A stretch of DNA of 64,000 bases from Klebsormidium nitens (taxonomy: Eukaryota > Plantae > Klebsormidiophyceae), in NCBI GenBank assembly GCA_000708835.1, contig DF237016.1, positions 62,001 through 126,000 of the forward strand, written 5' to 3'. The notes under the pieces are model-generated. The model saw only the letters and a program-made list of their open reading frames with translations, had not been told where the DNA came from and made no database searches. Positions 8,752 to 17,074 of this stretch are shown here, piece after piece. Position 1 is the first letter of the stretch. Every line of letters starts with the position of its first letter. The position numbers and the translations under genes were made by a program.

Positions 8752-9167
8752 TCTTGTTTGTCAATTCACCTACAACACTCCTGCAGAATGCATGGCGGAG
8801 GGTCAGCATGGGTCAGCATTTGATAAGTTCAGAGTGAACAAGATCAAGAGCGAAAGAGCACCGCCACCGGCTAGCGCGCTGGTGCCAGTGGATTTTCCAG
8901 AGTCTCCAAAAATCGTGCTCATCTATAATCAGTGTCAATACGCTTACAGAGACGGCAGCAAAGCTGACAACCGACGGCAACCTATCTTGACGAGATCAGC
9001 CCTTCAGCGCGGGTCCGAGCGAGTCCCGGTTTTCTGCTCCAAAATCCTCCATTTCTGACACCAGAATTCCAAAATGAATACTTAGATCGCGCTTGATATC
9101 AAACAATGTCAATGGTCCTACCTCTTGCTTGGCGCAGTCAGCTAGCGCCAGCGGCGCAAGTACGACG

Positions 9168-9710
9168 AAGTAGACTCCTTTTGTTAGTGTCTCAGGCCCC
9201 AAAAAAGTGTGAAAACTTCTTACACGCGGGATCATAGGTTCACAGGGTATCCGCGTGGACCGTACTGTCAGCTCTGGTCCTTTGAACAAAAATGCGTCAG
9301 AATTTCAGGTTTTACCGTACACTTTGCGGTACAGATTACAGTACGGATGGAACCGGGTCAGGATAAATGGCCTACAACACTAAAAGTAAAAGAACTCTGC
9401 CCGGTTGTCACTGTCAATGAGTAACCCTAATGTCACTGGGAAATGGCGTAACCCTAACAAAGCGCTCGTCGATTGGCGTGAACCGTCACAGGTTTGCAAC
9501 GTAACCCTATGGTCAAAGTAAGCGCCCCGGGTCAATGTCAATGTCAACGTCGATGTCAATGTCGATGTCAGTCTCGTTGTCAACGCTGTAACCACTCCCG
9601 TTTTCCACCGACAGACTGCAATAATTGTCACAGTTCAGGTGCTTCCAGGTGGGTTGAGAGTGATTCACACCAATCAGAGTGGCGGAGACACTAACAAAAG
9701 GAGTCTACTT
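9168..9710. mobile_element. MITE-like element with 26-bp perfect terminal inverted repeats
   Basis: 9168-9193 (aagtagactccttttgttagtgtctc) is the exact reverse complement of 9685-9710 (gagacactaacaaaaggagtctactt). The interior is non-coding and about 540 bp. No TSD was found. Confidence 0.6.
9406..9585. repeat. Array of short motifs: three GTAACCCTA copies and a degenerate (TGTCAA/TGTCGA)n run
   Basis: gtaacccta at 9421, 9448 and 9501; gtcaatgtcaatgtcaacgtcgatgtcaatgtcgatgtca at about 9531-9570. Confidence 0.7.
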
Positions 9711-9931
9711 TGATAGTTTTGCGCCAGTGGCAGCAGAGTCTGATCAACCGGACCCTTTCCGGCCAAACAGCCGTCCGAACCTGTCGATGGACGGAAATGT
9801 TTGCGATCATGTGTGATCGCTGTATGAGGCTGAGCTGGACGAATTGTGCTAGCGCCGGCGGCGGCCTTCAGTTTTGGCGAGGGAGCACTTCCAAGCAGAA
9901 GCCTGAGCTACAGCCTGAACGGTACAGCACG

Positions 9932-12900
9932 ATGAAGGTTCATCAAGGAACGTCCGTCTTGTGCACTGGGGCAGGTTCTGGCATTGGTCGAGAGACGGTG
10001 CTGGCGCTTGCAAAGCTAGGTGCAGATGTCACAGTGGTGGATCTTTCAGAGGAGGGCGGCAGAGAGACTGTCCGTCTAATTGAGGAGGCAAGGCAAACAC
10101 TTTCTGGCAGACAAAGTGGCGGGCCTCCGGCGGCCATTTTTGTCAAGTGCGACGTCACCAAACCAGGTAAGTATGCTTAGCTGTGACTGCAGACTCTGCG
10201 CTTCTTAGGAGCTGGATTGGCTTCCTAGCTTGCTTTGGGCCTATCCTCTATGAAAGGAAAGTGAGCTCACGCAATATGTCATTGAAACTCCTTCAATTCT
10301 TGTTTACTTCTTATGCCCTTTGATCAATGCTAAAAACTGAAGCCATCATGCACGTACAATAAGATTATACCACCCCATGTTTAGCTTCACCGATCTAAAA
10401 GGACTTGTGTCAAACATCTTTTGCAACTTCAGACCGCTCAGTGCGCCTGTCCAGTGGTGGCGTCCTTGATTTCTGCTTGCAAACAATTGAGAGACAGCGG
10501 ATTGCAGTTGTAGAGACACTCTGCGTTGTAACATGCATGATCAATAACTTCTGTCGTCATATTTGCAGAACAATTGGTGGCTGCGTTCAAGGCTCATCTC
10601 AGCACTTACGGCAAGCTAGACATATGCATCAACAATGCTGGGATAATGGAGAACACGCGCTTTTTGGATGATGCCTCAGAAAATGGGGCAGGGGCCTGGC
10701 GAAAAGTCGTGGACATCAATCTGACGGCCACCATCGATGGAACGCGGCTAGCCGTAAGTGCTCTCATAGGTCCAGGAGACTGTCTGCTTGATGTGTTTAG
10801 GCATTTGATGAATCCATCATCAGAGGACCGTCACAGGACAACAATCTTGTACAGCCCTTAAACGAGACTCGTTGACTCCGTTAAGAACGCTTTGGAACAG
10901 GACTTGTTGGCGCAGGCAAGTTGCTTGGACCAGAACTAAAGCCTGGATTGTTGTCAGGACTACATGACATTGAAAGAGCTGACGCCGTAAAGACCGAACT
11001 ATTTGAATGGTCTGGTGCCAGGTAGAGCTTCAGGGTGACGGCAACTGCAGGATGTCAGCTTGATTGCTGCTTGCATGTGAATCTTTCTGCCGACGAAACC
11101 GGAAACAAATTGGAAAGTCGCATCTGTTTGCCGTCAAGCTTTTCCAGCTTTTCACTATTCCGTTTTTGTTTTGACTCTTCTGCCTGAGCCTGCTTGTTTG
11201 CTTCCAATCATCCAATGTCCTTCTTTTCTCGCTCTCGCAGCTGCGGGCCATGCTGGAGCGCAAGACGCCCGGCGCCATCGTCAACATTGCCTCAGCCGCC
11301 GGCCTCTACCCCACCCCCTTTGGGCCCATCTATGCTGCTTCCAAAGGTAAGCTCATCTGCCATTATGTGTCATAGTTCACTCCTGTTGTGTGTGTACTTG
11401 ACTAGTTTCTCTGTAGATCAGGGTGAATTTCTGAAATCTTTAGTGACCTTCAGCAAGACAAAAAATGGGCATGTATTGCCAGTCACTCAGAAGTAGCTCT
11501 TAATAACTGCTTCGTCCAAAATCCAAAGTGTTCCCCAATCTTGCGTGTCTGGCCTAGTCTCTGTCGCCCCTACGGAAGATTCTGAGATCAAAACCGCTGA
11601 ATGACACTGCAATGAAATCCATGAGGTTGCCCCTGCCTGTCGGTGCAGGCGGTGTCGTCCAGTTCACCCGCTCGCTGGCCCACTTCTCTAAGAAAGGCAT
11701 GCGAGTCAATGCCCTCTGTCCCCTCTACATCCAGACCCCCATGTCATCTCCCGGCGTTGGATTGATCAAGTCCTACTTGGACGAAGCTGGGGGGTACATC
11801 CCCATGCAAACTGTCATAGATGGTGAGAACGCTTTAAAACCTTATCCCCCCTCTCTTCTTTTCCCAATTTCAGGGGGGGTGGTCCAGCTGACGAGATCAT
11901 TGGGTCACTTCAAGAGAAAGGGAGTCCGAGTGAACGCTCTGTGCCCCGAGTTCATTGACACGGCCTTGGGGAAAATGGCCGAGGAACACATCGGAGCGCA
12001 TCTCAAGTCGGTGGGGGGCTTTATTCCCATGTCGGTCGTAGTAGAAGGTACGGCCGGGTCTTTCCGGTTGTGCTTCACCAAAGGATTTCAAGTAGGAAGC
12101 TGTACAGGCGAGGAAGTCAACATTCCCGTTCAACATTCCAACACGATTGTCAGGAAGAGTAGACACGTGCCAAATGCTCGAGTGTTCCGGGTTTTGTTGC
12201 CGACTTTGTCAAGCCAGACAAGGCGTTTTTTTGTTGCACCATCAGTATCTGATGCTTATATTTCGTATGGTTTCCTGCTGACCTGCCCGGTTTTATCATC
12301 CCAAGTCAGCCGGTTCAGCTTGCTGAATCTGTGCGCTAATCTCCTCTGCTAACCCGGCGCGAGTATCGTCATTCCACAGGCATCCTGGAGCTCATTGATG
12401 ACGACAGCAAGGCGGGGGAATGCATGCGCATCACGAATCGGACGGGGCGAGACTACTGGCGGCCGAAAAACGTGGGGCCGCCAGCGAGGGGGCAAGGGAA
12501 ACCTGTGGCTGCAAACCTTCCAGCGGAAACCCGGAAGATGTGAGTGAAATTTGACTTGCTGGGGGGAGAACAGGAGGAACGCAGATTTTCGTTCTCCCTT
12601 TCGTGACCCAATTGTGATAGCCTTAGGCCTTTGTTGCGAGCCACGGCAAATGCGTGAAGTGCTCACAGACTCCCTGCTTTTTAATCTCGTGAGATTGTCG
12701 TGATCGAGGCGATGGTAAAATGGACTTTCGCAGTGTAGCAGAGAAGCTCTGCGCACGGGCGGCAACGAAACCTCTTTTGAGAGCGTTTCGTCACGATCTC
12801 GTTGAAAATAGACAATGTCCCCAAAGTACTACGTGACTCTTCAAACAAGCAGCATATTCGACTTTCATCTTTGTGCCGAACCTGGACGAGCGGACGTTGT

Positions 12901-15815
12901 TTCCACGTTGTATCTCATCCTTCTTCACCCTGCAGTGTCGTCCACACTCTGAGCACGGACTTCCGCTCCGCCACGCGGCTAGTGTCAGAACCCATGCCGC
13001 GTCCTGCCAAGGGGACCATCCTGATGCGACACGTCTACGCCGGCATCAACGCAAGCGACGTAAGGGCTGGAAACATTTCTTGCTCCCGTTCGCTCCGAGT
13101 AGCCGGTCACGGAATCTGTTGATAATCCGATAAATCTGTGCTTAAAAGCTCAGTCCTCGTTGATACTTTCTTAGGAGTTGTACTTGGGCATGTCCCATAA
13201 TCGTGCTTGGTCTCTCAAGCTCTCAGCTGGCACTCCCTTTCATCCCAAGTTCATTCGCACTGCGTCTCCACTTAATATTTCCTACAGGTTCGGCCCAGCC
13301 CTGTGACTGCAACATGTGCTCAGACTGTGTTTCCGCACCTCCTCACCTAAGCTAATCCACCATACTTCAACTTTCTTTCTGACCACTTCACGAAGTATTG
13401 TTAGTGAGCATTAACCTACCCATGTTTAGCGCTTTCATTTCCGCTCTACTGCAGATCAACATGAGCGCCGGGCGTTACTTTGGCAGCCACGAGAACGCGC
13501 TCAAGATGCTGCCGTTCGCTGCCGGTTTCGAAGCCGTTGGAGAAGTCGTCGCGGTCGGGGAAGGCGTCAAGGACTTCGCCGTGGGCGCGCCGGTGGCCAC
13601 GCTCTCGTACGGCGGCTTCGCAGAGTACTCACAGGTGAGGCTTTCTTCCTCGAACGATTCATACGAGTAGCCGTGGCTTCTGTTCTTGTGTCTCTCGCGA
13701 AAACGGAGGTCAAGCGGCGGCTCTGCCGTTTCAGATGCTGGCTGACACTTGAAGCAGCTCACTAGTTGCGGTCGTTGACAGCGACAAATTTTTCGCAACA
13801 AGCGTCGGAATCTGCAATACATGCTCTGTGCAGTTTAGCACCGCTGTCTCTTTCAGTTCCCGCGGGAAGGTCGAGGGTGAACAAACCTGCAAAGTGTGCC
13901 TTCCTCAGTTTCATGGAAGCATGCTTGGGTTGCCAGTCCCTGGGTTTGCCATTCGACGAGCTTCTGTAGATGAAGTCAATGATGAACGAAGGCGGTGCAA
14001 TTGAAACGAACGTGGATGATCCTGCGCAGGTGGATGCAAAGGTAGCCATCGCCGTGCCGGAGATCTCTCCAGAGTTGGTTGCCATGCTGACGTCAGGTCT
14101 GACGGCTTCCCTTGGACTCGAACAGGTGGGCCTTTCGTTCGAACTCTCGGGTATTCCGGATTTAGGTCCTTCCGAACAACAAGGAGCGCCTCAGCGGTGT
14201 AATTGTGATGCAACCGTCACTGTTTGCGATTTCTCGAATGGCTGCCTTGCCGGCAAAGGATCACAGGCTTCCACTTACCGCGCACACGTCACTGAAGATT
14301 CCATAAGCAACCATACGCTGGCCTGCTTTCTTTGCCTCGTTCTGCGTCAAGTCTTACCGTTCTTCGTCAGGGCAAAATGGGCACCGGCGAGACGGTTCTG
14401 GTCACGGCGGCTGCGGGCGGCACCGGCCAGTTTGCGGTCCAGCTGGCGAAGCTGGCGGGGAACACCGTGGTCGCGACGTGCGGGGGCGCGGAGAAAGCGG
14501 CCCTCTTGCGGAGCCTGGGGGTGGACCGCGTGATCGACTACCGGACAGAGGACGTCGGACAGGTGCGGAAGTTTTGGATAAGAACGCTTTGGACGGCCAT
14601 AAAGTCGTTGCATTGCCGTGGAGGGACGCAAGGTTTATGGAGGTTAGGAGTTGGTGCTAGCGGTCTCGGGCTCTGCAATGGTTCGAAACGACGTTCGGGA
14701 CAATCCGCTAACGCATCTGCGCTCAACATTTGAGCTTCCAATTTTCTACTAGCATCCTCTGGCGAGCACGCTTGCGCGAACGCGCGAAAAAAATTCATGC
14801 CATCAGCCTCGGCAAACATTGACTCAAGTAACCCCCGTCGTAATCCGTGCCCGCTTTCAGCTCATACAAACCCCTTTCAGGGACTCCAGATTTTTTCCTA
14901 CTCATTGAATTCTTTGACCCGCACCGCAGGTGCTCAAGACGGAGTTCCAACAAGGTATGGACGTCATCTACGAGTCGGTGGGCGGCAAGATGTTCTCCAC
15001 GTGCGTCAACGCGCTTGCGCGCGGCGGCCGCCTCGTCGTCATCGGGATGATGTCACAGTACACGGCTGACGCCAGCAAGGGCTGGGCGCCCTCGCAGCAG
15101 ACGGGCCTCCCGGAGAAGCTGCTGTGGAAGTCGCAGCAGCTCATCGGCTTCTTCTTGGTGCACCACACGCGGGACTACCGCAAGCACCTCGCCAAGCTGA
15201 GCAACCTGCACCGAAGCGGGCACCTCAAGGTGGGCGGAGTTTGCGAATGTCAGGGTTTTGGCGCTTTCCGGGTGCTGGGAGTTTTGCAGACAGCTCGAAC
15301 ATTTGGGAATTGAACCGTGCTATGAATGTTTGCTTAACTTGAATAGGCGAGGCGGTTCTTGGTGCTGCTCAGCGCTCCGCCTTTTCTTCCTAGGAGGCCT
15401 CTTTCTTAGCAGTACAGAGGACCCTCGCGATGCAAGAGCGGATGTCCTGGGTTATTTGAGCTGAGGAGGAAAGGCCTGCTCAAACCGAAATTGTGTTGTC
15501 TGTTTGGATTTTGATTCTATACATGAGGAACCATGGATTCCAGCGGGTCTGTTTGAGAGTTCGTCAAGACTGCTTTCCTTTCAACAACTGTCATCCGCTT
15601 GAACCGCTCTGTGATTCGCGGTCTGTTGCTTTAAAGAGTCTAGCGTTCGCCTCATTGTGACACGTGTCCCGTCTATGCAGGTGGCGATCGACCCCGTGCA
15701 GTTCCGGGGCCTCGAGTCCGTGCCGGATGCAGTGGATCACCTACAAGCGGGGAAGAGCTTGGGCAAGGTCGTTGTCACGATTGCGAAGAATGCGCAGCGG
15801 AGTTCAAAGCTGTAA
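9932..15815 (+). CDS. Bi-domain oxidoreductase: N-terminal short-chain dehydrogenase (HPGD-like) + C-terminal MDR/ZADH2(PTGR3)-like quinone oxidoreductase, with a PTS1 signal (plant NQR/ARP-type)
   Basis: SDR motifs TGAGSGIGR, INNAG and YAASK. MDR motifs YAGINASD, AGFEAVGEV, LTSGLTA, VTAAAGGTGQFAVQLA and YESVGG. The C-terminus is ...SSKL* (TAA at 15813-15815). Exons are canonical GT-AG. Confidence 0.92.
11649..11822 (+). other. Duplicated exon A (174 nt, phase 1-1) of the SDR domain; putative mutually exclusive exon
   Basis: cag|GC...G|gtgag boundaries; encodes GVVQFTRSLAHFSKKGMRVNALCPLYIQTPM...GGYIPMQTVID. Confidence 0.8.
11874..12047 (+). other. Duplicated exon B (174 nt, phase 1-1) of the SDR domain; putative mutually exclusive exon
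   Basis: cag|GG...G|gtacgg boundaries; encodes GVVQLTRSLGHFKRKGVRVNALCPEFIDTAL...GGFIPMSVVVE. Same length and phase as exon A, with 51 nt between them. Confidence 0.8.
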
Positions 15816-17074
15816 AACACTCCTGCGGAAGGCGTCGCACTTGAGAGATCAGCTACGTGCCAGTTTGTACCATACTCGTTATCGAGGTCAAGGCACAAGT
15901 TTTGACAAGAGGTATTTCGCAAGCATATGGCACACGAGTAACCAGAGGACTAACTTTGCCCCCGAACACTGTCAAATAGACTCCAATTTGAAAAGGCCTC
16001 GGCTTGGTTTGAATGCAACGGGTCGTGCGAGTCTAGCCGGCTTGAACGGAAATTTCAACCTGACGGTCATACGCACGGCCTGCATGAGGTTAAAGAATGT
16101 GGCAGAGGAACATTCATTTAGTGGTGGCATGTGCAATATGCCACCTGCTTAGGATGATCCGGCATTCATATGTGCGAATGATCGATCGATCTACTCGATC
16201 AGCGCAAACCAAGTCGTGCAGGCGGGCGCCGCTGCGTGCATACTAGTATACGCAGAACGTACGCGGCCGCGCTGCCTTTCCATTCGATAGTGTTATTTGC
16301 GTATAGTGCCGGATCATAGACAGCTGGCTAGTTATGTCCTTCGCTTATCACATATAGCTTGGCGCGCGCACCTGGCGCTCTGCGAAAAATACAAAAGTGT
16401 CCATGATGCCCGGGCCGAGGCGATCATTCAGTGGCATGCATGCCACACATTGCGCAGCTGCAATCCAGCATGTTGCCGGGGCCATGCTTGACTTTAGGGT
16501 TCTGAAGAGAGCTGACTTCTGTCCCGGTTTGAGTGAAGGGATCGGGAAGCCGCGAGGACACGTAGAAGGTTTGCGAAGCCTGGCTCGCTGGGTCGACTTA
16601 CAGGAACGTCATGGTAGAGATGCGATCGAAGTGAAGGGACTCAGGTGTTTACAAGAACGGCTCCCTTCCATAATGTCTATCAAAGACGGCACCGTCCAAC
16701 ATTTCAAAGCATATGGGAAGAATCTGGATTCAATCCGACGGAACGCTCTCAACGTCTTGCAATAACAAGACAATGCACAACAGCTTAGGAGAAACTCTTG
16801 AGACCCCTACATTTCTGCTTCTGGCTTGGACTGGTTCTCGTCGCAACACTGCGCAATCACCTCACCCCAATGACTGTCCGCCGCGCTTACATGGAGGACC
16901 AGATGCTATCCGGCCCCGATAGCGAACGTTTTCCCGGCCAGGGCTCCATAAGCCACGGACCTTATGAAGTTCTTCACAAGCTCGTTGCTTCCAAGCAACC
17001 GTTCCCATCCATATTTAAGCTCTTGTAGTCCTTCTTGAACGTTCCCTTTCGCCTTTTGTTCGCAAATGCCTCTC

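What the first reader, a model, noticed from the sequence alone, without database searches (positions are those of the whole stretch)
11649..12047. Tandem-duplicated, probably mutually exclusive exons swapping the SDR substrate-binding loop
Seen: two homologous exons, each exactly 174 nt and phase 1-1, both with intact acceptor and donor, separated by only 51 nt. They are conserved at the start (GVVQ.TRSL.HF..KG.RVNALCP) and end (GG.IPM..V) but diverge in the middle (LYIQTPMSSPGVGLIKSYLDEA vs EFIDTALGKMAEEHIGAHLKSV). Established: in SDRs the segment after YxxxK and the ALCP strand forms the substrate-specificity loop, and very short spacing between paralogous exons can sterically block co-inclusion. 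Inference: one gene produces two peroxisomal (SKL) isoenzymes with different substrates, a mechanism rarely described in green plants.
Basis: partly seen in the sequence, partly recalled or inferred. Interest (0 to 1): 0.75.

Follow-up and report, generated by a model that had tools for sequence, protein, structure and literature searches.

The report
Either-or twin exons in algal dehydrogenase
A Klebsormidium nitens gene for a peroxisome-tagged two-domain oxidoreductase holds two adjacent 174-base twin exons for the substrate lid, and related algae keep both as working code only 29 bases apart, so each mRNA most likely takes one or the other; no RNA data could be checked.

Summary
Exons 4A (11649-11822) and 4B (11874-12047) are each 174 nt, phase 1-1, with AG/GT sites. 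They are 51% identical as protein and 51 nt apart.

The gene is the K. nitens orthologue of plant peroxisomal NQR. It fuses a 15-hydroxyprostaglandin-dehydrogenase-like SDR to a PTGR3-like MDR and ends in SKL.

Three related algal genotypes from metagenomes and SRA assemblies keep both exons:
- Length and splice sites are the same in each.
- dN/dS is 0.09-0.14 at near-saturated dS.
- The flanking introns no longer align.
- The spacer is only 29 nt, breaks the frame, and holds the likely branch point for 4B.

All 19 orthologues compared, from other streptophyte algae to Arabidopsis, have a single copy. This argues against a dead copy and against a single long exon. It makes double inclusion unlikely and fits mutually exclusive splicing by steric interference.

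The public Augustus model (GAQ80953.1) includes both exons and has a wrong 3' end.

The 51-nt K. nitens spacer is in frame and might be spliceable.

This scan has already noted other either-or exon pairs elsewhere in this genome, so this is a new member of a known kind.

The parts
9932..10166 (+). Exon 1: start codon and Rossmann motif TGAGSGIG of the SDR domain
   Evidence: Found verbatim in GAQ80953.1.
10569..10753 (+). Exon 2: SDR, with the NNAG motif
   Evidence: Pfam adh_short E = 2.4e-8. AG/GT sites.
11241..11346 (+). Exon 3: SDR, with the catalytic Ser and Y-A-A-S-K. It ends in phase 1.
   Evidence: Pfam adh_short E = 2.5e-7.
11347..11648 (+). Intron upstream of 4A (302 nt). The pyrimidine tract before the 4A acceptor is weak.
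   Evidence: Not alignable with the relatives' 472-484-nt introns.
11649..11822 (+). Exon 4A: the derived twin (C-P-L-Y after the beta strand), 174 nt, phase 1-1
   Evidence: dN/dS is 0.09-0.13 against the relatives. Pfam adh_short_C2 E = 1.9e-6.
11823..11873 (+). Spacer of 51 nt, GT..AG. It holds the strong pyrimidine tract of the 4B acceptor and a yUnAy match (CUUAU) with its A at 11844, 22 nt from the 4A donor. It is in frame and has no stop in K. nitens.
   Evidence: It is 29 nt in L001, L003 and L006. The branch point is a motif-based inference.
11874..12047 (+). Exon 4B: the ancestral-type twin (C-P-E-F, as in all orthologues), 174 nt, phase 1-1
   Evidence: dN/dS is 0.09-0.14.
12048..12379 (+). 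Intron downstream of 4B (332 nt)
12380..12539 (+). Exon 5: last SDR strand and the linker to the MDR domain
12936..15229 (+). Exons 6-10 (12936-13059, 13455-13634, 14030-14125, 14371-14562, 14930-15229): the PTGR3/ZADH2-like MDR domain
   Evidence: The orthologue's MDR half matches 2WEK at E = 1.5e-76.
15681..15815 (+). Exon 11: conserved C-terminal strand, ending S-S-K-L and stop (PTS1-type end). The public model lacks it.

Best explanation
Exons 4A and 4B are a mutually exclusive pair that arose by tandem exon duplication in the Klebsormidium lineage. Exon 3 is spliced either to 4A, which then joins exon 5, or directly to 4B, which then joins exon 5. Each route gives a 628-residue protein.

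Double inclusion is prevented sterically. The pyrimidine tract of the 4B acceptor, and most likely its branch point, lie within 29 nt (relatives) or 51 nt (K. nitens) of the 4A donor. U1 bound at the 4A donor and U2AF/U2 bound at the 4B acceptor therefore cannot sit there together, and the short spacer cannot be removed as an intron.

The two isoforms share the catalytic core. They differ in strand betaF's exit and in the lid of the 15-PGDH-like SDR domain, so they probably differ in substrate or in how they close over it.

Shown: the anatomy, the conservation of both exons, the short frame-breaking spacer in relatives, and the single copy in all orthologues. Inferred: the splicing outcome, the branch points, and any functional difference.
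For: (1) The twins have the same length and phase, intact sites and 51% identity.
(2) Both exons are retained at 174 nt with AG/GT in L001/L002, L003-L005 and L006.
(3) dN/dS is 0.09-0.14 for each twin at dS of about 1-1.5, similar to exon 1. Synonymous change exceeds non-synonymous change with Fisher p from 1e-8 to 2e-10. The flanking intron does not align.
(4) The spacer is 29 nt in all three related genotypes. It is not a multiple of three, and reading through it hits a stop (P0001 and P0002).
(5) Regular introns of this gene are 245-487 nt.
(6) All 19 orthologues aligned have one copy. The K. nitens double-inclusion model is a 58-residue insertion relative to them.
(7) Each twin keeps the core motifs (R-V-N-A-L-C-P, I-x-T, G-G-x-I-P-M). 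The lid is conserved within each twin but differs between them: 26 shared invariant positions and 9 fixed differences.
(8) In the AlphaFold2 model of the double-inclusion SDR domain, one copy's worth of sequence (residues 192-247) has pLDDT below 50.
(9) There is precedent. In C. elegans, mutually exclusive pairs with 3n-length exons rely on intervening introns of 14-34 nt that are never excised (PMC4165533). The same principle is stated in PMC6071210.
Against: No RNA evidence was obtained. The public protein GAQ80953.1 contains both exons. It is an Augustus prediction (PMC4052687) and is demonstrably wrong at its 3' end.

Both 174 and 51 are multiples of three. In K. nitens, neither double inclusion nor spacer retention would break the frame or trigger decay. 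A 51-nt intron is not impossible for a spliceosome, and I could not obtain the minimum intron size in Klebsormidium.

The AlphaFold2 result is steered by the alignment. The relatives' taxa are unnamed, and all come from only a few samples.
Confidence: 0.72

Rival explanations
1. Both exons are constitutively included, as in the public annotation. The 51-nt (or 29-nt) spacer is spliced out as a very short intron, and the enzyme carries a tandem 58-residue repeat inside its SDR domain.
For: GAQ80953.1 is modelled this way. The frame is kept because 174 = 3 x 58. Both copies being under purifying selection is also expected under this reading.
Against: The model is an ab initio Augustus prediction with a wrong 3' end. 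The relatives would have to splice a 29-nt intron, while the gene's other introns are 245-490 nt. No orthologue has two copies. The repeat duplicates a central beta strand of the Rossmann sheet, and AlphaFold2 leaves about 56 residues unplaced. Even so, the copy that would be looped out keeps its strand and cofactor motifs invariant.
Confidence: 0.12
2. Only one exon is used in K. nitens today, probably the ancestral-type 4B with its strong pyrimidine tract. The other exon is silent or used only rarely.
For: The 4A acceptor has a weak pyrimidine tract, especially in the relatives. No transcript evidence exists for either exon.
Against: Both exons show dN/dS of about 0.1 across near-saturated synonymous divergence, and across the shallower L001-L003 split. 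Length and splice sites are intact in four genotypes. A neutral copy would keep an open frame in only about 8-9% of substitution-only simulations, and it would not keep this amino-acid conservation.
Confidence: 0.07
3. In K. nitens the spacer is retained, and 11649-12047 acts as one 399-nt exon or as a third in-frame isoform.
For: The spacer is 51 nt, in frame and free of stops in K. nitens.
Against: In all three related genotypes the spacer is 29 nt, and read-through ends in a stop within a few codons. The spacer sequence is a typical GT...pyrimidine-tract...AG and shows no coding-type conservation. An open in-frame spacer has a chance expectation of about 0.15 (my arithmetic: one third times (61/64)^17).
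Confidence: 0.05

Closest known systems
Mutually exclusive exon pairs enforced by steric interference: rat alpha-tropomyosin exons 2/3, and C. elegans egl-15 5A/5B, let-2 9/10, gly-5 and gly-6 (PMC4165533; Smith and Nadal-Ginard 1989 as cited there)
   Same: Adjacent homologous exons of equal 3n length. The intervening intron, or the donor-to-branch-point distance, is too short for a spliceosome, so double inclusion is physically blocked without relying on nonsense-mediated decay.
   Different: This pair is in a streptophyte green alga and in a metabolic enzyme. Exclusivity is not shown by RNA. The K. nitens spacer (51 nt) is longer than in the relatives (29 nt) and longer than the C. elegans cases (14-34 nt).
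Arabidopsis peroxisomal NQR, At1g49670 ('ARP protein'), and its land-plant orthologues annotated as prostaglandin reductase-3 or ZADH2-like
   Same: The same SDR + MDR two-domain architecture, a length of about 630 residues, and a PTS1-type C-terminus (SRL, AKL or SKL). Identity is 47-55% over the aligned SDR part.
   Different: Land plants and the other streptophyte algae compared have one copy of the exon-4 segment. That the Arabidopsis hit P0129 is At1g49670 rests on my memory of its length and name, not on a tool result.
Human 15-hydroxyprostaglandin dehydrogenase (HPGD, PDB 2GDZ) and human PTGR3/ZADH2 (PDB 2WEK)
   Same: For an orthologue of this protein, the closest solved structures are HPGD for the N-terminal half (E = 1.9e-36) and PTGR3/ZADH2 for the C-terminal half (E = 1.5e-76). 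Exon 4 aligns with the stretch of HPGD after Y-x-x-x-K that includes strand betaF and the lid.
   Different: In humans these are two separate proteins, and no alternative lid exons are involved there as far as I know. The substrates of the plant and algal fusion are unknown.
Other either-or exon pairs noted by this scan in K. nitens (DTC carrier, GSH1, OEP80-like, pyruvate kinase, prolyl 4-hydroxylase, LUC7, MUT9-like kinase)
   Same: The same genome and the same design of tandem twin exons. Several are reported there as RNA-checked.
   Different: Those are unchecked AI notes on other loci. They raise the prior, but they are not evidence for this locus.

Membership tests
Mutually exclusive exon pair from tandem exon duplication | Adjacent homologous exons of the same length and phase with their own splice sites | tested here: met
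   174 nt each, phase 1-1, AG/GT, 51% identity, E = 3e-22. The same holds in L001, L003 and L006.
Mutually exclusive exon pair from tandem exon duplication | Both exons are functional coding sequence under purifying selection | tested here: met
   dN/dS is 0.09-0.14 for each, Fisher p from 1e-8 to 2e-10.
Mutually exclusive exon pair from tandem exon duplication | Each mature mRNA contains exactly one of the exons | not testable with these tools
No spliced contig or transcript-derived protein was found.
Mutually exclusive exon pair from tandem exon duplication | A mechanism that forbids double inclusion, here an intervening intron too short to splice | tested here: inconclusive
   The spacer is 29 nt in three related genotypes, which is below any conventional minimum. 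In K. nitens itself it is 51 nt. The minimum intron size in Klebsormidium was not obtained.
Classical SDR (Pfam adh_short), 15-PGDH-like | T-G-x-x-x-G-x-G, N-N-A-G, catalytic Ser and Y-x-x-x-K, and a profile match | tested here: met
   The motifs were read in exons 1-3. Pfam hits were found exon by exon. The orthologue's best PDB match is 2GDZ.
MDR, PTGR3/ZADH2-like | ADH_N plus ADH_zinc_N domains and close similarity to PTGR3 | tested here: met
   Precomputed Pfam PF08240, PF00107 and PF13602 on GAQ80953.1. The orthologue's C-terminal half matches 2WEK at E = 1.5e-76. The K. nitens exons 6-10 are 39-86% identical to the fern orthologue.
PTS1-targeted peroxisomal matrix protein | C-terminal S-K-L-type tripeptide | tested here: met
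   ...SSKL-stop in the window, L001 and L006. Orthologues end in SRL or AKL. At1g49670 NQR is in the peroxisome proteome with SRL (PMC3355810).
PTS1-targeted peroxisomal matrix protein | Actual localisation in peroxisomes | not testable with these tools
   This needs microscopy or fractionation.

The most novel reading that the evidence does not exclude
Klebsormidium regulates a lid swap in a bifunctional peroxisomal enzyme. This enzyme joins, in one chain, homologues of the two consecutive steps of animal prostaglandin breakdown: a 15-hydroxy dehydrogenase and an enone reductase. The swap would give two enzymes with different oxylipin or hydroxy-fatty-acid substrates from one gene. It would be part of a wider use of steric either-or exon pairs in this alga that land plants do not share.
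Probability: 0.3. Interest if true: 0.7.

Novelty: new member of a known kind. Interest (0 to 1): 0.5.

Why it matters
Either-or exon pairs that swap a defined protein module are common in animals but rarely documented in the green lineage. This candidate has the textbook steric design: 3n-length exons and a 29-nt spacer in relatives.

It sits in the alga's orthologue of plant peroxisomal NQR, an enzyme whose substrates are unknown. The two lids therefore offer a natural pair of variants for finding what the SDR half binds.

It also shows that the public K. nitens protein (GAQ80953.1) is probably wrong in two places. This matters to anyone using it in alignments or in structure prediction.

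Tried and rejected

2. Short protein searches. I looked for transcript-derived fragments with exon 4A alone and with the open frame 4A-spacer-4B. Only genomic read-through ORFs of relatives came back.

3. Exact-pattern scan of metagenome contigs for a spliced 4A-to-5 or 4B-to-5 junction, degenerate enough for K. nitens and the relatives: no hits.

4. The search for related loci in metagenomes with the exon-4A alignment: only distant SDRs at 34-61% identity over part of the query, and no further twin-exon loci.

5. Representative-library search: no representative carries both copies. It gave the orthologues used later.

6. Alignments of single-exon rows to a full-length orthologue were badly scattered by MAFFT (A3 and A4). 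Only the four clean rows were used for the profile search (A5).

7. RNA folding around the spacer: less stable than shuffles, so no selector or docking structure is claimed.

8. 'One copy is a dead exon' was rejected on dN/dS. 'One long exon' was rejected on the relatives' 29-nt frame-breaking spacer.

9. I never joined exons into a spliced protein for any search or fold. Exons were searched one by one by reference. Whole-protein steps used the database proteins P0055, P0059 and P0015.

Full report
**Observation**

- Exon 4A is 11649-11822 and exon 4B is 11874-12047.
- Each is 174 nt, follows an AG, precedes a GT, and is entered and left in phase 1.
- The translations are 29/57 identical, with BLASTP E = 3e-22. 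The DNA is only 53% identical and synonymous sites are saturated, so the duplication is old.
- No third copy lies in the window.
- The 51-nt spacer 11823-11873 starts GTGAG and ends in a long pyrimidine run and CAG.

**The gene**

Reading the flanks and checking phases by script gives an 11-exon gene plus the twin. All introns are GT-AG.
- The start codon is at 9932 and the stop at 15813-15815. With one twin included the protein has 628 residues.
- Exons 1-3 carry T-G-A-G-S-G-I-G, N-N-A-G and Y-A-A-S-K, and match Pfam adh_short exon by exon.
- Exons 6-10 form an MDR domain. The last exon ends S-S-K-L.
- The regular introns are 245-487 nt, so the 51-nt spacer is a clear outlier.

Exons were searched one at a time by reference, and whole-protein steps used database proteins.

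**Organism and public annotation**

Earlier notes of this scan named Klebsormidium nitens. I tested this.
- NCBI GAQ80953.1, 'ARP protein [Klebsormidium nitens]' (P0055, 843 aa), holds exons 1-10 of my model verbatim.
- That model includes both twins, joined as ...T-V-I-D-G-G-V-V-Q-L....
- After exon 10 it uses a spurious piece near 15397 and reads exon 11 in the wrong frame. It therefore loses the conserved C-terminal strand and the SKL.
- The genome paper states that nuclear genes were predicted with Augustus (PMC4052687).

The double inclusion in the database is therefore a prediction, not a transcript.

**What the protein is**

- The profile search returned hundreds of land-plant and streptophyte-algal proteins of about 630 residues with the same SDR + MDR architecture. 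They are named ARP protein, prostaglandin reductase-3, ZADH2-like or 15-hydroxyprostaglandin dehydrogenase.
- For an algal orthologue, the N-terminal half is closest to human 15-PGDH among solved structures (2GDZ, E = 1.9e-36). The C-terminal half is closest to human PTGR3/ZADH2 (2WEK, E = 1.5e-76).
- At1g49670, listed as peroxisomal NQR with an SRL end (PMC3355810) and as an unclassified SDR conserved across Viridiplantae (PMC3541173), is to my knowledge the Arabidopsis member. That identification of P0129 is from memory.
- In the alignment to 15-PGDH, exon 4 covers the rest of helix alphaF after Y-x-x-x-K, strand betaF (R-V-N-A-L-C-P), and the lid up to the last strand.

**Comparative evidence**

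Two short ORFs found with exon 4A (P0001 and P0002), and one found by the representative search (P0008), led to genomic contigs of related algae:
- L001/L002 and L006, from two JGI metagenomes;
- L003-L005, from three SRA runs.

The taxa are unnamed. Across the gene they are about 73-97% identical to K. nitens as protein, exon by exon, with dS of about 1-1.5.

In every one of these loci:
- Both twins are present, each exactly 174 nt with AG and GT.
- For K. nitens against the relatives, dN/dS is 0.09-0.13 for 4A and 0.09-0.14 for 4B. That is like exon 1 (0.10-0.12) and somewhat above the other exons, which range from 0.02 to 0.09.
- The excess of synonymous over non-synonymous change is significant for each twin, with Fisher p from 1e-8 to 2e-10.
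- The intron upstream of 4A cannot be aligned between K. nitens and the relatives.

So neither twin is a dead copy.

Within the exon, 26 positions are invariant and shared by both twins; these are the helix end, the strand, I-x-T and G-G-x-I-P-M. Nine positions are fixed differences. The lid centre is conserved within each twin but unrelated between them.

**The spacer**

In L001, L003 and L006 the spacer is 29 nt.
- It is not a multiple of three, and the read-through ORFs end at a stop a few codons into 4B. The reading as one long exon therefore fails there.
- The 29 nt hold the 4A donor (GTGAG), a conserved A-U-C-A-C, and then a pyrimidine tract and CAG.
- If that A is the branch point of the 4B acceptor, it lies 9 nt from the 4A donor and 20 nt from the acceptor.
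- In K. nitens the best yUnAy match (C-U-U-A-U, with its A at 11844) lies 22 nt from the donor and 29 nt from the acceptor.
- These branch points are motif-based inferences.

The design matches steric interference as described for mammalian and C. elegans pairs. In C. elegans, the five mutually exclusive clusters with 3n-length exons that cannot rely on decay have intervening introns of 14-34 nt that are never excised (PMC4165533; PMC6071210). The 4A acceptor has a weak pyrimidine tract and the 4B acceptor a strong one. This suggests 4B may be the default and 4A the regulated choice, but that is speculation.

**Orthologues and origin**

- All 19 orthologous SDR domains aligned have one copy of the segment. 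They include other streptophyte algae such as Spirogloea, as well as bryophytes, lycophytes, ferns, a gymnosperm and angiosperms. The K. nitens double-inclusion model shows a clean 58-residue insertion relative to them.
- All carry C-P-E-F/Y as in 4B. The C-P-L-Y/F and lid of 4A are derived.
- In a tree of the segment (57 columns, so weak), the 4A sequences form one supported clade (97/84) and the 4B sequences another (96/90). The two clades are sisters with weak support (73/53).
- The duplication thus predates the split of K. nitens from these relatives and is probably specific to their lineage.

**Test of double inclusion by structure**

AlphaFold2 was run on residues 1-345 of GAQ80953.1 with the orthologue alignment. 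It gave a confident Rossmann fold that uses the helix start from 4A and the strand and lid from 4B. Residues 192-247, about one copy's worth, had pLDDT below 50. The alignment steers this result, so it is only consistent with, and not proof of, a fold that has room for one copy.

A stronger argument comes from conservation. The part that would be looped out keeps its strand and cofactor motifs invariant, which makes sense only if it sometimes serves as the real strand.

**What is missing**

- Protein searches found no transcript-derived product of this gene in the size ranges 31-231 and 350-1115 residues. The range of 231-350 residues was not covered.
- A junction pattern scan of metagenome contigs found nothing.
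- In K. nitens itself, the 51-nt in-frame spacer means exclusivity is less firmly enforced than in the relatives. Some double inclusion or spacer retention cannot be excluded.

**Verdict**

The reading as an either-or pair that swaps the SDR lid is the best explanation (about 0.7). It rests on comparative genomics, not on RNA. The 'different substrates' part is inference.

In kind it is a tandem-duplicated mutually exclusive pair with steric enforcement, which is well known in animals. It is new as a case in this enzyme family and in a streptophyte alga.

This scan's own notes already list other either-or pairs in the same genome, several reported as RNA-checked. I did not test those notes and they count only as a raised prior.

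Noticed in passing
window 15230-16760: The public model GAQ80953.1 is wrong at its 3' end. After exon 10 it uses a piece near 15397, reads exon 11 (15681-15815) in the wrong frame, and runs on to about 16760. The annotated protein has 843 residues instead of 628 and lacks the conserved C-terminal strand and the SKL end.
   Followed up: yes
window 9932-15815 (whole gene): The protein joins a 15-hydroxyprostaglandin-dehydrogenase-like SDR to a PTGR3-like enone reductase. In animals these are separate enzymes of consecutive steps in prostaglandin breakdown. The fusion is conserved from streptophyte algae to angiosperms and is peroxisome-tagged, but its substrates appear to be unknown.
   Followed up: partly
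window 9147-9731: A 47-nt inverted repeat (81% complementary) flanks 491 nt and ends about 200 nt upstream of the start codon. It looks like a small non-autonomous (MITE-like) insertion in the promoter region.
   Followed up: partly
window 9421-9590: Two to three GTAACCCTA (telobox-like) motifs lie at 9421, about 9448 and 9501. They are followed by a run of GTCAAT/GTCGAT hexamers at 9531-9590, all inside the inverted-repeat element.
   Followed up: no
L001 1479-2540: The related algal contig carries a reverse-transcriptase ORF (RVT_1) about 2.5 kb upstream of the orthologous gene. No counterpart was looked for in the window.
   Followed up: no
L007 3361-3528, L009 289-456: More distant relatives from other samples have a single exon-4 equivalent. 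In the L007 and L009 ORF calls its ends look similar to those in K. nitens, though I did not check the splice sites. On these short contigs there is no second copy within the few hundred bases available. The organism is unknown.
   Followed up: partly
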